Source: Klebsormidium nitens
Lineage: Eukaryota > Plantae > Klebsormidiophyceae
Direction of reading: 5' to 3'
DNA length: 64,000 nt
NCBI GenBank assembly: GCA_000708835.1
Contig: DF236984.1
Span: 186,001 to 250,000 of the forward strand
Shown here one piece after another: positions 54,989-60,759 of the stretch (within the stretch, counting starts at the first letter, position 1; every line of letters starts with the position of its first letter). Below the pieces are notes generated by a model that worked only from the letters and a program-made list of their open reading frames with translations, did no database searches and was not told the origin of the DNA. Position numbers and translations under genes: made by a program.

Positions 54989-56149
54989 TACCCCGACCAA
55001 TCAAACAGGAATCAAACTGAAAACCCCAACCTTAATAATCACGCACTCCGCACCCCAACCCACCCTAACCACCAGACTAACCCCACCTGTCCCCCGGGTG
55101 TCACACGGCCGTTAGGTACCATAGGTCCAGAGTGATTGTCAGGGTACCTATCCGGACTTGTTGTAGGTACTAGGTTTGTACCGTCTCTATCATACATGTG
55201 CATTGTGGAGTCTGGACTCTGGGCCTCTGGAGTCTGGACTCTGGAGGCGGACGGACACCGCAAAATTGCTCAGTGCTGAGTGTACATACCGGTACATACA
55301 GCCCTGCAGTACGTAGCTAGTGCGCAGTGTGCACTTTTGAGGTTGGAAATTGTGGGGTCGTACCGGCGGAGCAATGATGATGACGTAAAGCAAGGGTTTA
55401 ATTGAAGATGCGAGTCTGCCAGCTGGTGCCGTACCGTTTAATACAGACCCGAAATATGTGGTTCTGATGCAGTCGACGGGCAGTCGACATACCTATCACA
55501 GGCTGTGGGCGGAATCGGGCGTACCGGTAGAAGTTGGCCCCTGGGCAGTGGGTAGGTACCTACAAGGTAGGTACGGTAGCTAGTCCTAGTATCCTAGAGG
55601 CTAGTAGCCTCAATGCAACGCTCAAGCCTCAGCCCCGCTCCGACTCCCGAGTCATGATAGGTACGTGTTGCTGCTTGTGGTTCTGATGCATTTGGCCATT
55701 TAGCATAGCTAATCATGGTGTGCACTGTGGGCATCTCGCTGCTTCGGGTCTCAAAAGACGACACGTACCTAAAGTTCCTAGCACGGTTCCAGGTGCGGTC
55801 TGCGCTCACGAGTCAGAGGTCAAATTCAACGTCATCTCGGTCACAGGTACCCCTACGTGCATTACATCACCCTAATATATATGGGTACGTAGGTAGTACA
55901 AGGGCCCATGAGGGGCCCTCATCGGCCACGGGCCGACGTCAGCTCAGTCATCCACGCCACAAAATCCGCACGTTGTGACGTGGCCGCTTCGAATGATGCG
56001 CATTTCCACATGACGCTCAATGAGTGCCAGGCTGACTAGGTACACTGATAGCGAGACTTGGAGTTTAACCTACTGACTGCAGCTGTGGCCTTGCATTGCT
56101 GGGATTCCGGAATCCGAACCCATCAGTCGACCAGTTCATCAAGAGGGCC

Positions 56150-56309
56150 TATAAAAGGCATTGCCAACAGGCAGAGAGCATCATTCATCACATTCTCTTT
56201 CGCTCACTTCGCTTCTCTCTCAGTTCTCCAGCTTTTGCCAACGCGCCACCAAACGAGGACTCCTCCCTCCAACTTGCCTTCGTCCGTCTGCCTCCTTAAA
56301 AACAGTAAG
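56150..56309 (+). promoter_or_regulatory. TATA box (TATAAAA 56150-56156) and non-coding first exon of the UVI-1-like gene
   Basis: TATA followed by a pyrimidine-rich leader ending in AAG|gtgagt at 56309; acceptor ccctgcag directly before the ATG at 57066. Confidence 0.65.
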
Positions 56310-57065
56310 GTGAGTCAGCCAGTCCCCCACTCAGCTGGCATCGTCGCCTTTCTGGTTCTCCACTTTGCTCTGCGCCATTAGAAGGGTTGCGCCGATTGGT
56401 TTGGACGTGATTGCGAGGAGAGCCTCTCTCTAGGCTTTTGCTTTGTGTCAAGCAGAGAGTGCATTGGTGCGCTAATGATGCCCCACTCTGTGAGTCTGGC
56501 TTTGTCAATAAAGGAAACTTTACTCTGATAGGAGGATAAAGCATTCTGCGGGAGCTCATGTTTATTTGCTGTTAACGCTCGTTGACTATTCTGCACAGAT
56601 TGAGTCAGAAACTGATCTGCTTCTGCATAGATTCGAAGTGGGTGGTACTAGTCTGGGCGGTTCTTGAATCTATACAGTTGTCGCCAAGGCCACCTTACTT
56701 AACCCACCAACTTAAAGCTAGCTCTTCTATTTGAACCTGCCAGAGTCCTGCAGAGCGGTATCTGGTTGTTTCCCATAGGTCGTTTGAAGAGTGCTCTTCT
56801 GATAACTGTAATGTCCTGGGACCCTTACCAGATGTTTTAAGCACCAAAGCTGGACTGCGCACGGCTCTTAAGTTAGGTCTTGGTAGCACCTCAGTTAGCC
56901 ACCAACTTGCAGAGAACCATTTGGGTCACTTCAGCTCTGCTTTTCCGGGGCTTCCGATCTAAACCCAATCCAGGAAAACAAGACATGAAGGAGCTGAGCT
57001 CTAGCTTTCTCTCTTGACCAACTGTGCTTTCTCTTGACAGCTGTCCTTCTTTGATTCCCCTGCAG

Positions 57066-58301
57066 ATGGCCCGCTCCCTGCTCGCCCTGACTGCCCTCTT
57101 GGCCCTCGCCAGCTGCATCGCCACCTCCGAGGCGCAAACGATCACTGCACCCACGGTCGTTGGCTGGCTCAAGAACATCACCACACAGTCGCCGCAGCAG
57201 CTGCAGTCCAGTGCGAACCAGATTACCTTGCTCAGCGGCCCTCTGATCATCATTGGCCAGGGCCCCTTCCCTCCGATTATTAGGGGCTTCACCAGCATCG
57301 TGACGACCGGCACTAGCGCCAATGCGAGTATGCAGTTCTCTACGCTTCTTGCTTGCTTGGTGTGCCTGAGAAACCAACCAGAAGGGCCGCCTTTCCAGCC
57401 CTTGTGAAGGCTTGGCCTGGCAAGGCTTATGACCTTGTGTCTTTGAAATCAATCGCTTGCGTCTGCGTGTACGGTTGTTGCCTTTGACACTCACGTTCCC
57501 TCACTTCCAGTCATTCGACCATATTGAGGCCTGAGTTGAATGAAAGCCTTGTTGGGAGGTGAGTCTGAAGCAGGACCGAAAAGTTGTGACGTCACTTCTT
57601 ATGCTGTGGTTGCAAACTGGACGAGCCTCAACAAATGTTGAAGCATTTGAGCTAGGCTACTTGCAGCACACATCTACTGTGCAAGACTCTTGGATCGAAC
57701 TCGCGTTCTTCGCGTTACACCGGCCAGGGGTTAGAGGACATTCCAAGGGTCGCAAACCTTTCTGTTTTCTGCTTGCCCTTTAGCGTCTTTGTTGGGTCGA
57801 CCAATACCGAACCATGCACTCGAGGCGCTTTGGTTAACCCCTCGACCTCATAATCTACTTTGCCAATCTGCAGACACAGCTTTAGTACCCGACAACCCAG
57901 TTCCACTAACCGCCCCGCCTCTTTCCGCTGCGCAGACCTAGCTCAACGGCGGCACCGTGGGCCCTTTCTCCCCTGCCGACCAGACGGCCATCTTCAATGC
58001 GTTCCGCACCTTCGTCACAGTCCACCAGCAGCTGCTCAACATCCTCATCGGCAAATCCGGCCTCTTCCAAACTGCGCCCTTCATTGGGCAGCCCATCTCT
58101 CAGGTGCTCCGCAGCATCGAGTCTATTGTCGACGCGCTCGCGTTCAATCTGATCGACGCGTGCCAGGCCAGGGCGGCGGACCTGACCTCTGAGAAGGACA
58201 AGCTGAAGGTAACCATCCAACTCGTCATCACCAAGTACGATGGTATCAGCGTGGCCGGCGTCCAGCCCGGCGGCCGGAAGCTGCTGAGCGTGGCGGCATA
58301 A
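57066..58301 (+). CDS. Secreted protein of the fungal UVI-1-like family; exons 57066-~57323 and 57936 or 57942-58301; possibly disrupted
   Basis: Signal peptide MARSLLALTALLALASCIATSEA; motifs GPLIIIGQGPFPPIIRGFTSIV and AIFNAFRTFVTVHQQLLNILIGKSGLF...PFIGQPISQVLR.IE.IVD, which I recall from ascomycete UVI-1. The join needs a GC donor and meets a TAG at 57939. Confidence 0.75.
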
Positions 58302-60759
58302 AAGCGTGCCGTTTCTAGTTTGCCAGGCTTTACAAACTTCAGGTAATAGAGGGTGAAGTAGTAGTAAAGAGTTCGTACGCATGGTCTGTAAGTTCCGTGC
58401 GAGGAAAAGCTTGCAGCTGAAAGAAAGCGAGCCTGTCAAATTCACAATGCAGTTAGAACCAGTGGGGACTGTGGAAATGTCGAAGTTGCGAATGTAAAGG
58501 CTGGGTGTGAGGCACAGAGACTAAACGCTATTGCAAGAAATAAAATTACATGTGGCGCGTAGGACTCGTGCAATTTTGATTACTGCCTGACCGCTACTTA
58601 GGTTACTTTGCTCGCAGCTGCAACTGAACTCAGTAAAGTCGAACTTTGCGTCGTGAAACTTTTGAAAAAGAACAACTCTGAAGTACAGTGAAGTATTCAA
58701 AGTAGAACGCGCACCTTTCTGGCAGACATTAAATAAATAGCATGCATCTCGCTGTCCCATTTTATGAGACAATCTCGATCATTGTCAAAGGCTTACTAAG
58801 TCTTACTAAGTTAACTCCATAGTCTCCAATCTACCGGACATGCCTACTCAACTAAGCGTATTTCATTTATGCTAAGGCCATGGAATATGTTTCAGATCTT
58901 TCCAGTACTAAAAGCCAAAACGTGCACTATTCTATCCAGCTGCAACGTTCACATGTACCATGGCACTCCCATTTGATTTACTCCCAATATAGTATACTAT
59001 TTCGTAGTACATCCTTTTCCTCATAACTTGGCAATAAACGGCCGGACCTAGTACTCACACAATTCGTCATTCTATTCATCAGTTCATCCGCTTCAGCTGG
59101 GCCCGATAAGTAAGTCTCGGCACTGTCACTCCTCGCAACAATGGTCACTGTAAATTCCACTTTAATGACGCTTTCAAGTTCGAATTGTACAGAGAAGAAC
59201 ATCGCGCCAAATCTAGCTGCATGATAACTTGATAAATTTGGTTCGTATCAACTGGATCATACTACCTACTCACGCACGTCAACAGACAATGAACCGTACA
59301 GAGTTGTAACAAAAGACAAGCCGAGCATATGTGCTGGTCAAGGATTGCATGTTAGCTTTTTATACGAGGTCAAATGTGAGCTCTACAATACGTAGACGTT
59401 TGAACCTACACGTACCCATCCAAAGACGTTCAGGCGAAAGAAAGCTCAACCCTTGAACCCGGCGCACCTCAAGTCTGTCATTCGAATCTACATTCCTCAA
59501 ACGCTATATACGTTTCCGTAATTAGTTAGTACGCCTGCGAGCTACGACATCTGCTTGCAAAGCCCGCAGGCCCTGAAGAAGTTCTCGGATTCGAGTTGCG
59601 CCGCGCGGGTCCGCCGGCCTCTCGCCGCCCTCCGACGTAACGGGAATCATGATAGACTGTGTGCCAGAATGTATATATGTCCGCAAACCTAAACGGCCCG
59701 GTTTATGCAAGCGCTTGCTAGGTACAGCTGCACCTCGAGGGCTTTTGGGGGTTGAAAACTCCTCAGGTTTCAATCAAAGAAAGGCACTCTTTAGAACATC
59801 ACTGCTCATATAAGCGTCAGTGAATCTTCGATGTGCGGACAGGTTAGACTCGTGTCATGCTTGGAAAAAGTACCGTCATACGTCACCGGTCGCGGGCCCC
59901 GTTTTTTAGAAGCTGCGCATGTAGTTCGTTCAGCATTTCAGCAGTTAAGCAAGCCATGGAAGCACGATTCCAAGCGGCCCCTCTTCTATCTGTTGGACAA
60001 TTACTAGCCTAGTCTGATTCATACAACGCGCCGCGCACCGGTCAAGAAGACTCCTGCTTGGAGCACGCGCGCTGGCATAAGCCTTGCTCCGCGCGACTCA
60101 CTTTCAGTCCTCTCGCTTTCCCTTGATCCAACACATCAAGTGCGTCGGCCTCTCATATTGGCTTGCCTCTTCCTGAAGGGAAGAGGGCATCCATACAAAT
60201 CGGGGTTTTTGCCGCCGTACGGCGCCGCTCTGCGGGCCCGCCGTCGGACCTGCTTCGCTTGGCCCGTTTCGACGATAAAACTCGGCGTACGGCCTATAAA
60301 TTTGTCAACATAGTTTGGCGAGATTTGTCCGACTGGGCCCGCTTGCGGCGCAGTTCGCAGCTTACGGATCGAACATTTTGGTCCGACCACTGCATGGTGC
60401 AAGTCCCGGTGTCGAGCTTCGTGCATGTTCGCGGACTTCGACGACGAAGTTTCGTGCTTGCTTGGTCGGTGGTGTTACGGCTAAACAATCCACACCGTTC
60501 AAACGAGCTTTCGACGATCGAAAGCAAAATCAGATTGTCAACCGTTGATCGGCGACATAATCAAGGAAGAGGCAAGCGTCCGCCGTCACACAGACGGCGA
60601 CCCATGTAGTAATCTACACTCATCCGAATTTTCGCGTGACCGTGCATGATCCAATTCATCATAAAATGGCCGCTCACATTCATGTGTGCTTAAAGGGGGC
60701 GTCGGGGTATAAAACCCAATTTCCGCCGACCAATTTTGACATCCGGCTTGGCAAATATT

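What the first reader, a model, noticed from the sequence alone, without database searches (positions are those of the whole stretch)
57066..58301. Fungal UVI-1-like secreted protein in an algal genome: horizontal transfer candidate
The protein matches, motif by motif, my recollection of the UV/light-induced secreted UVI-1 family, which I know only from fungi. It has a host-like structure (TATA box, 5' UTR intron, one coding intron) and lies among algal-type genes, arguing against contamination. Inference: a fungus-to-alga transfer possibly linked to terrestrial light or desiccation stress.
Basis: partly seen in the sequence, partly recalled or inferred. Interest (0 to 1): 0.75.

Follow-up and report, generated by a model that had tools for sequence, protein, structure and literature searches.

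The report
Fungal lipid-binding protein gene in Klebsormidium
The streptophyte alga Klebsormidium nitens carries a real, intron-bearing gene for a secreted five-helix protein of the fungal UVI-1/HsbA/Mp1p kind, most likely captured from an ascomycete fungus, and in the reference strain it carries a stop codon at the splice site that a related strain uses.

Summary
Observation confirmed. Window 57066-58301 is gene KFL_000350290 on K. nitens scaffold DF236984.1. Its two coding exons match Pfam PF17615 (C166, the family that sources name UVI-1) at 1.7e-8 and 1.4e-18. They are 53-65% identical to Pezizomycotina UVI-1 proteins.

It is not contamination:
- It lies on a 318-kb scaffold between algal genes.
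- It has a TATA box, a 5'UTR intron and a GC-AG coding intron. A ~92%-identical relative splices both.
- Three other algal-type contigs share the coding intron position, and one shares a neighbouring gene.
- A tandem paralog (KFL_000350310) lies about 11 kb downstream.

In trees the algal copies nest inside the Dothideo/Sordario/Leotiomycete clan. Marchantia copies nest elsewhere, with Morchella, Pyronema and Polyporales. Joint algal plus Marchantia monophyly is rejected (AU p 6e-105). So "fungi only" is wrong, but fungus-to-alga transfer is well supported, probably alongside a separate transfer into liverworts.

The paralog's model is a five-helix bundle like the fatty-acid-binding Mp1p/Afmp4p domains.

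Caveats:
- The reference allele has TAG at 57939-57941. It is in frame if the relative's acceptor is used, and only an acceptor 6 nt downstream avoids it.
- The public gene model is probably wrong.
- The UV or desiccation link is untested.

An overlapping-window note (s1-299643) had flagged the same gene pair.

The parts
56151..56158 (+). TATA box (TATAAAAG), about 30 nt upstream of the inferred transcription start
   Evidence: Read directly. The relative's transcript contig reaches about 105 nt upstream of the ATG in spliced coordinates, which is about 56205.
56185..56309 (+). 5'UTR exon. The 3' end is firm and the 5' end is inferred. It contains no ATG.
   Evidence: The donor is AAG|GTGAGT at 56309|56310. 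The loose 5' end of the relative's mRNA contig maps to 56279-56308 with one mismatch. The public model uses the same exon end.
56310..57065 (+). 5'UTR intron (GT..AG, 756 nt)
   Evidence: The acceptor ctgcag|ATG lies at 57065|57066.
57066..57323 (+). Coding exon 1 (86 aa): signal peptide plus helices 1-2 of the domain
   Evidence: Pfam PF17615 at E 1.7e-8, profile 12-93. It is 60% identical to the paralog and 46-54% to fungal UVI-1 proteins. The exon end at 57323 is fixed by the relative's spliced contig.
57066..57134 (+). Predicted signal peptide (23 aa, ending SEA before Q)
   Evidence: By inspection of the translation: a basic n-region, a 13-residue hydrophobic core, and small residues at -3 and -1. 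It is nearly identical in the paralog and in L002/L003. No signal-peptide predictor was available.
57324..57935 (+). Coding intron, GC-AG, phase 0 (612 nt). It runs to 57941 if the downstream acceptor is used.
   Evidence: The relative's transcript contigs in runs X1 and X4 skip it. The same intron position occurs in L001 and L003 and about the same site in L002. This differs from the two Alternaria introns.
57939..57941 (+). TAG. It is an in-frame stop if the acceptor cag|57936 is used. Its AG is also a possible alternative acceptor (tag|57942).
   Evidence: Searches give the sequence. The relative reads ACA CAG CTC here (tables 5 and 5c).
57942..58301 (+). Coding exon 2 (119 aa plus stop): helices 3-5 and a C-terminal tail
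   Evidence: Pfam PF17615 at E 1.4e-18 and 68.2 bits, against a cut-off of 36.7. There are 317 related clusters in the 1.84-billion-protein library.
58302..58758 (+). 3'UTR, with AATAAA at 58732
   Evidence: The relative's contig runs to 58758. K. nitens-identical contigs cover 58304-58494.
55715..55792 (+). Extra upstream exon that appears only in the public model GAQ79675.1. It is probably not part of the mRNA.
   Evidence: It lies upstream of the TATA box. It gives the protein a 52-aa N-terminal extension in front of the signal peptide that no homologue has.

Best explanation
This is KFL_000350290 of Klebsormidium nitens. It is a resident nuclear gene for a small secreted protein of the UVI-1/C166 family, which belongs to the HsbA/Mp1p superfamily of five-helix, lipid-cavity proteins. 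An ancestor of Klebsormidium and its relatives most likely acquired it by horizontal transfer from a filamentous ascomycete of the Dothideo/Sordario/Leotiomycete group.

After transfer the gene gained host-type features and duplicated. These are a TATA promoter, a 5'UTR intron and a new phase-0 coding intron. The tandem paralog is KFL_000350310.

Inferred mechanism: the signal peptide directs the protein to the cell wall or medium. There the helical bundle encloses a fatty acid or other lipid, or sticks to hydrophobic surfaces, as its fungal relatives do.

Shown here: family membership, gene structure, residence in the algal lineage, phylogenetic nesting, and the fold of the paralog.

Inferred only: secretion, lipid binding, and any role in life on land.

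In the sequenced strain, the usual acceptor puts a TAG two codons into the last exon. The full-length protein may therefore be made only from an acceptor 6 nt downstream, or not at all.
For: Family: Pfam PF17615 matches both exons. The word search gives fungal UVI-1 proteins at 56-66% identity. Full HMMER gives 317 clusters. Of the hits given a source name, all were fungal except two K. nitens proteins, Marchantia, and one Quercus suber record.

Identity and residence:
- The window is DF236984.1:186001-250000, with the gene between algal genes.
- A ~92%-identical relative expresses an intact, spliced orthologue.
- Contigs L001, L002 and L003 have the same two-exon structure.
- L002 also carries the Arm-repeat neighbour.
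- Exon GC3 is 0.83-0.85, against intron GC of 0.52.

Introns: Alternaria has introns after FRE and after VVD. The algal intron lies about 20 residues upstream of the first of these.

Phylogeny:
- In the careful 65-row tree, four algal rows form a 97/95 clade inside the Leotiomyceta clan.
- That clan is separated by a 99/96 split from the clan holding Basidiomycota, Pezizomycetes and Marchantia.
- All five algal rows as one clade is the better tree, 2.5 lnL units higher, p-AU 0.57.
- Algal plus Marchantia monophyly costs 124 lnL units, p-AU 6e-105.

Fold: the AlphaFold model of paralog P0039 has pLDDT 83 and five long helices. The top Foldseek matches are Afmp4p with palmitic or arachidonic acid (5J5K, 5J5L) and the Mp1p ligand-binding domains (5CSD, 5ECF, 5FB7), with TM 0.77-0.86 by target. 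PMC13537970 describes the HsbA family's five-helix hydrophobic cavity and treats it as a fungal family.
Against: - The sister group of the algal clade is unresolved, so no donor class can be named.
- The window row in the trees is exon 2 only, about 100 columns.
- The paralog P0039 was pulled to Pyricularia in the free search.
- Moss members were not placed in the tree.
- No K. nitens transcript covering the coding exons was seen. Only two 100%-identical contigs over the 3'UTR turned up.
- The TAG at 57939-57941 may make the reference copy non-functional.
- The fold was predicted for the paralog, not for this protein.
Confidence: 0.8

Rival explanations
1. Reference-strain pseudogene. The gene is of fungal origin and works in the genus. 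In K. nitens NIES-2285, a CAG-to-TAG change two codons into the last exon truncates the product to 88 aa. The locus would then be a freshly inactivated copy, with the paralog KFL_000350310 carrying the function. This reading concerns present function and is compatible with the transfer.
For: The relative's mRNA uses the acceptor before 57936 and reads ACA CAG CTC. The window has ACC TAG CTC behind an intact cag acceptor. Only fragmentary 3'UTR contigs were found in runs with 100% identity. The public annotation had to skip 27 conserved residues to obtain an open frame.
Against: The same change creates an AG at 57940-57941. Using it keeps the frame and loses only two residues. The rest of the frame is intact and highly conserved. 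Contigs cannot show rare isoforms or absence.
Confidence: 0.4
2. Ancient vertical inheritance. The family was present in the common ancestor of fungi and green plants, or at least of streptophytes. It survives only in Klebsormidiophyceae and bryophytes after many losses.
For: Members exist in two streptophyte lineages, Klebsormidium and Marchantia. Mosses are reported to have them as well (bioRxiv 10.1101/2024.03.26.586753 and 10.1101/2022.10.21.513210).
Against: The two streptophyte groups sit in different, well-separated fungal clans, and their monophyly is rejected at p 6e-105. The algal protein is as similar to Dothideomycete proteins (63-64%) as fungal classes are to each other, and more similar than to Basidiomycota, Morchella or Marchantia copies (about 40%). 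Intron positions are not shared: Marchantia MARPO_0073s0099 is intronless, and the algal and Alternaria introns differ.
Confidence: 0.06
3. Fungal contamination or a chimeric join in the assembly.
For: Identity to fungal proteins is very high for a cross-kingdom pair. No read-level check of the K. nitens assembly was possible here.
Against: The gene lies in the interior of a 318-kb scaffold with algal genes on both sides. Its GC-AG and 5'UTR introns are 612 and 756 nt, while the Alternaria gene has about 134 nt of intron in two introns. A related alga's transcriptome holds the spliced orthologue. Independent contigs from another sample share the structure and a neighbour gene. A diverged tandem paralog has the same signal peptide and tail.
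Confidence: 0.02
4. Transfer in the opposite direction, from a streptophyte alga into fungi.
For: The trees are unrooted.
Against: The family spans Ascomycota and Basidiomycota in hundreds of clusters, and per PMC13537970 also Mucorales. The algal copies form one small, shallow clade. Rooting on the algal branch would make ascomycete classes paraphyletic to Basidiomycota.
Confidence: 0.02

Closest known systems
Fungal UVI-1 proteins (Pfam PF17615 'C166'), e.g. Alternaria atra, Plenodomus lingam, Glarea lozoyensis and Colletotrichum proteins named UVI-1 by their sources
   Same: Same length class (about 180-205 aa), with an N-terminal signal peptide. The conserved blocks are shared along the whole protein, at 53-65% identity, and score above the Pfam cut-off.
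   Different: The host is a streptophyte alga. There is one long phase-0 GC-AG intron at a new position instead of the two short fungal introns. The C-terminal tail is algal-specific (QPGGRK-LSVAA type). Induction by near-UV is recalled from the Bipolaris oryzae uvi-1 work (Kihara et al. 2001, own knowledge, not found in the paper library). It is untested here.
Mp1p ligand-binding domains of Talaromyces marneffei and Afmp4p of Aspergillus fumigatus (PDB 5CSD, 5ECF, 5E7X, 5FB7, 6J6F, 5J5K, 5J5L)
   Same: A five-helix bundle of about 150 residues. These are the best structural matches of the paralog's model, with TM 0.77-0.86 by target and rmsd 2.3-4.2. The solved proteins hold palmitic or arachidonic acid in a central cavity.
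   Different: Sequence identity is only 11-19%. PDB sequence searches with exon 2 and with a family profile found none of them. There is a single domain and no Ser/Thr-rich or GPI region. Ligand binding was not tested, and the fold was modelled on the paralog.
HsbA, hydrophobic surface binding protein A of Aspergillus oryzae (Pfam PF12296)
   Same: A weak but specific Pfam match (E 1.4e-5). Many relatives carry precomputed PF12296 hits. It is secreted and has a helical cavity fold (PMC13537970).
   Different: The score of 25.9 bits is below the PF12296 cut-off of 33.5. Recruitment of cutinase to polyester or plant surfaces is a fungal feeding function with no obvious algal counterpart.
Marchantia polymorpha UVI-1/HsbA-like genes (Mp_5g00760, MARPO_0073s0099, AXG93_4242s1290, MPTK1_4g06545)
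   Same: The same domain family in another land-dwelling streptophyte, on chromosome-scale contigs.
   Different: Only about 40% identical to the algal protein. They nest with Morchella, Pyronema and Polyporales rather than with Leotiomyceta, and joint monophyly is rejected. MARPO_0073s0099 is intronless. Some are tandem arrays of two or five domains.
Other reported fungus-to-plant transfers, such as fungal fruit-body lectins in bryophytes and ferns (PMC11906373)
   Same: Small secreted or stress-related fungal proteins found patchily in early-diverging land plants and explained by transfer from fungi.
   Different: A different protein family. Here the recipient is a streptophyte alga, and the same family seems to have entered streptophytes twice.

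Membership tests
UVI-1 / Pfam PF17615 (C166) | Match to the family HMM above Pfam's gathering score | tested here: met
   Exon 2 alone scores 68.2 bits against the 36.7 cut-off. Exon 1 alone scores 35.4 bits. The two cover profile positions 12-93 and 107-168 of 171. The joined protein was not scored.
UVI-1 / Pfam PF17615 (C166) | Small secreted protein with an N-terminal signal peptide | tested here: inconclusive
   The 23-residue N-terminus has the n/h/c layout and aligns with the fungal leaders. No signal-peptide predictor or experiment was available.
UVI-1 / Pfam PF17615 (C166) | Induction by near-UV or light, the property that named the family | not testable with these tools
   The runs found held only assembled contigs, with no condition data.
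HsbA (Pfam PF12296) | Match to the HMM above the gathering score | tested here: not met
   25.9 bits against the 33.5 cut-off. The relation is at superfamily level only.
Mp1p-type lipid-binding domain | Five-helix bundle superposable on solved ligand-binding domains | tested here: met
   Met for the tandem paralog P0039, which is 49-60% identical to this protein. Its model has pLDDT 83, and the top PDB matches are Afmp4p and Mp1p LBD1/2 with TM 0.77-0.86. It is inferred for this gene.
Mp1p-type lipid-binding domain | Binds fatty acids in a central hydrophobic cavity | not testable with these tools
   This needs recombinant protein and binding or co-crystal data.
Horizontally transferred gene (fungus to streptophyte alga) | Recipient sequences nested within donor-group diversity with support, against the species tree | tested here: met
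   The exact sister group is unresolved.
Horizontally transferred gene (fungus to streptophyte alga) | Physically integrated in the host genome, with host-type gene structure, and inherited in related species | tested here: met
Horizontally transferred gene (fungus to streptophyte alga) | Absent from other green algae and most plants | tested here: inconclusive
   No chlorophyte or other algal name appeared among the hits given a source name. About half of the 150 listed representatives are unnamed, and only the top 150 of 317 were shown.

The most novel reading that the evidence does not exclude
Two land-dwelling streptophyte lineages captured the same fungal family of secreted lipid-cavity proteins independently, from different fungal donors. 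Klebsormidiophyceae took it from a Leotiomyceta-type ascomycete. Liverworts took it from a Pezizomycete- or Polyporales-like donor and expanded it to a five-domain array. Both lineages kept it because it helps manage a hydrophobic, air-exposed cell surface.
Probability: 0.3. Interest if true: 0.75.

Novelty: new member of a known kind. Interest (0 to 1): 0.55.

Why it matters
Fungus-to-plant gene transfers around the move onto land are debated case by case. This one is unusually clean. Identity to the donor group is high. The gene has a host-specific intron, microsynteny across related algae, and an expressed orthologue. The phylogeny also separates it from the liverwort copies of the same family.

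If the two captures are independent, the same surface or lipid-binding protein was selected twice in terrestrial streptophytes. That gives a testable candidate for how early land algae handled hydrophobic surfaces, lipids, or fungal neighbours.

On the practical side, the public model of KFL_000350290 appears mis-spliced, and the reference allele may be a null. Anyone using this gene in comparative or expression work should know this.

Tried and rejected
- A paralog inside the window: tblastn and a family HMM on the six-frame translation found only the gene itself. The paralog lies beyond the window end.
- Pfam on ten long ORFs around the gene gave nothing. The neighbours were identified from the public gene calls instead.
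- NCBIfam gave no hit.
- PDB by sequence, with exon 2 and with a 29-sequence profile, gave only chance-level hits. The fold search was needed.
- The ESM Atlas feature search only repeated HsbA/Ascomycota clusters, with scores under 0.9.
- Pattern scans of prokaryotic genomes and of JGI metagenome contigs with exon 2 found no relative.
- The AU test on the 149-row alignment did not finish in two runs. It was repeated on 65 rows.
- Paper searches for the gene identifiers, UVI-1, and HsbA together with Marchantia found no report of this transfer. Ma et al. 2022 (Mol Plant), which lists many plant transfers, was not in the library. Prior listing there cannot be excluded.
- The donor TTG|GTGTGC at 57356 and the GT donor at 57328 were considered. 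The relative's mRNA uses the GC donor at 57324.
- The joined, spliced protein was never searched, scored or folded.

Full report
**What is there.** The stretch 57066-58301 holds two open pieces in one frame. One is 57066-57323 (86 aa, starting with a typical leader). The other is 57942-58301 (119 aa plus stop). Both match Pfam PF17615, labelled 'C166, family of unknown function'. The E-values are 1.7e-8 (profile 12-93) and 1.4e-18 (profile 107-168 of 171). Exon 2 alone scores 68.2 bits against a cut-off of 36.7. HsbA (PF12296) matches below its cut-off. A word-based search of 5.8 billion proteins with exon 2 returned, as best named hits, Pezizomycotina proteins at 56-66% identity. They come from Alternaria, Plenodomus, Colletotrichum, Glarea and others, and their sources call several of them UVI-1. 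Exon 1 is 46-54% identical to the same proteins.

**Which genome, which gene.** Full HMMER against 1.84 billion representatives found 317 clusters. One of them, GAQ79675.1 (KFL_000350290 of Klebsormidium nitens), is identical to the window over exon 1 and most of exon 2. The gene look-up places the window at DF236984.1:186001-250000 of assembly GCA_000708835.1, a 318-kb scaffold. Upstream lie a polyprenyl synthase and an Arm-repeat gene. Downstream lie a CBM6-like gene, a paralog KFL_000350310 about 11 kb away and outside the window, and then a large ThuA/GSDH gene. Earlier scan notes had named the genome, and this confirms it independently.

**Gene structure.**
- TATAAAAG lies at 56151-56158.
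- A 5'UTR exon without any ATG ends at 56309 (AAG|GTGAGT).
- The first intron ends at ctgcag|ATG, 57065|57066.
- Transcript contigs from two runs of a relative about 92% identical in sequence join 57323 directly to 57936. Their 5' end matches 56279-56308. They run on to 58758, just past an AATAAA at 58732.
- The coding intron is thus 57324-57935, of GC-AG type and phase 0.

The relative's frame is intact. Its only indel in the coding part is 3 nt.

**A problem in the reference allele.** Where the relative's mRNA reads ACA CAG CTC after the junction, the window reads ACC TAG CTC. With the same acceptor the K. nitens message has a stop two codons into its last exon, which gives 88 aa. The T that makes the stop also makes an AG (57940-57941).

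I could not decide between these two outcomes.

The public protein avoids the stop differently. It uses a GT donor at 57328 and an acceptor at 58020|58021, which deletes 27 residues including the best-conserved block. It also adds a 52-aa N-terminal extension, read from the 5'UTR exon and from an exon upstream of the TATA box. No homologue has either feature, so I regard that model as an annotation artefact.

**Residence in the algal lineage.** Three further contigs encode close relatives with the same architecture:
- L001, from an ENA metagenome.
- L002 and L003, from one Logan sample, holding two paralogs.

In each, exon 1 covers profile positions to about 88, an intron of 340-600 nt follows, and then exon 2. 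In L001 and L003 the intron is phase 0 at the same residue position as in the window. L002 also carries four colinear translated matches to the window's Arm-repeat neighbour, at L002 10864-12451 against window 52713-51225, inverted. These proteins share the leader and an algal-type C-terminal tail with both K. nitens paralogs.

By contrast, the Alternaria atra gene has two short phase-0 introns, after FRE and after VVD. Unspliced fungal fragments show the same two positions. The algal intron lies about 20 residues upstream of the first fungal one. Exon GC3 is 0.83-0.85 and intron GC is 0.52. Contamination or a chimeric join is very unlikely.

**Distribution.** Of the hits for which a source gives an organism, nearly all are fungi. 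They include Dothideo-, Sordario-, Leotio-, Eurotio- and Lecanoromycetes, Pezizomycetes and Polyporales/Agaricales. There are three kinds of exception:
- The two K. nitens paralogs.
- Several Marchantia polymorpha genes on chromosome-scale contigs, including an 899-aa protein with five tandem domains and a 380-aa one with two.
- One Quercus suber record, which I suspect is a contaminant.

Two preprints report such proteins in the moss Physcomitrium. One is a secreted PF17615 protein (10.1101/2024.03.26.586753). The other is Pp3c14_22870, described as HsbA-like (10.1101/2022.10.21.513210). So the family is not confined to fungi. No prokaryotic relative was found.

**Phylogeny.** A 149-row tree over 191 columns and a careful 65-row tree agree on two clans, split with 98-99% support.
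- One clan holds Basidiomycota, Pezizomycetes (Pyronema, Morchella) and, nested next to Morchella, all Marchantia domains together with unnamed metagenomic sequences.
- The other clan holds Lecanoromycetes and the large Dothideo/Sordario/Leotiomycete UVI-1 group, and the algal sequences sit inside that group.

Four algal rows form a 97/95 clade. The long-branched paralog P0039 strayed to Pyricularia in the free search. Even so, the tree that holds all five algal rows together is 2.5 log-likelihood units better (p-AU 0.57). Forcing the algal and Marchantia rows together against the 35 named fungi costs 124 units (p-AU 6e-105).

The window's exon 2 is 63-65% identical to Dothideomycete, Sordariomycete and Leotiomycete proteins. 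It is about 40% identical to Morchella, Trametes and Marchantia proteins.

The simplest reading is one transfer from a Leotiomyceta-type ascomycete into an ancestor of these Klebsormidium-type algae, followed by duplication. A separate transfer went into the liverwort lineage.

Limits of the trees:
- They are unrooted.
- The window row is exon 2 only.
- The sister of the algal clade is unresolved.

**What the protein probably does.** A model of the paralog, built with a 29-sequence alignment, has pLDDT 83 and pTM 0.77 and shows five long helices. Its best PDB matches are all of one kind:
- Aspergillus fumigatus Afmp4p with palmitic or arachidonic acid.
- The two ligand-binding domains of Talaromyces marneffei Mp1p.
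- Drechmeria g7941.

The TM-scores are 0.68-0.86 by target. PMC13537970 summarises this family as secreted fungal proteins with a five-helix hydrophobic cavity. They bind fatty acids or adsorb to hydrophobic surfaces and recruit enzymes there.

I therefore propose that the mature algal protein (about 180 aa) is secreted into the wall or mucilage and binds a lipid or a hydrophobic surface. This is inference from fold and family. Nothing here tests UV, light or desiccation regulation. The near-UV induction of the Bipolaris oryzae uvi-1 gene rests on my own recollection of the literature, and I could not find it in the paper library.

**Novelty and verdict.** I found no paper reporting this family in Klebsormidium or Marchantia as a transfer. 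Large published lists that I could not read may include it. Fungus-to-bryophyte transfers of small secreted proteins are known, for example fruit-body lectins (PMC11906373). This is therefore a new, well-documented member of a known kind. Two points add interest: probable independent capture by two terrestrial streptophyte lineages, and a possibly null allele in the reference strain.

Noticed in passing
window 55715-58301: The public model of KFL_000350290 (GAQ79675.1, 232 aa) looks mis-built. It has a 52-aa N-terminal extension read from the 5'UTR exon and from an exon upstream of the TATA box. An internal splice (57327 to 58021) removes 27 conserved residues, apparently to avoid the TAG at 57939.
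   Followed up: yes
beyond the window end (window-equivalent 68960-70325; L004:10001-11366): Tandem paralog KFL_000350310 (219 aa). It has the same leader and C-terminal tail, 49-60% identity, and a roughly 30-residue low-confidence insert between helices 2 and 3. A CBM6-like gene lies between the two paralogs, and a bacterial-type ThuA/GSDH/PKD/CBM6/discoidin gene lies just after them. Putative foreign genes therefore sit close together here.
   Followed up: partly
P0027 (Marchantia polymorpha MPTK1_4g06545, 899 aa); P0090; P0035/P0050: Tandem arrays of the domain occur: five copies in one Marchantia protein, and two copies in another Marchantia protein and in unnamed metagenomic proteins. 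The lichen fungus Pseudocyphellaria also has a two-domain protein. This parallels the two ligand-binding domains of Mp1p.
   Followed up: partly
P0157 (Quercus suber POE62934.1, 403 aa): This is the only seed-plant record among the named hits. It appears in nr only, with no contig on record, and is probably fungal contamination of the cork-oak assembly.
   Followed up: no
L002:10864-12451 vs window 52713-51225: In the more distant alga of sample SRR23617307, the Arm-repeat neighbour lies about 8 kb downstream of the UVI-1-like gene and is inverted. In K. nitens it lies about 4 kb upstream. The neighbourhood is conserved, with an inversion.
   Followed up: partly
window 57239-57304, minus strand: The antisense translation of the GPLIIIGQGPFPPIIRG block resembles the sense peptide (59% over 22 aa). 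The DNA that encodes this motif is partly reverse-palindromic. This is probably a curiosity of the G/P/I codons.
   Followed up: no
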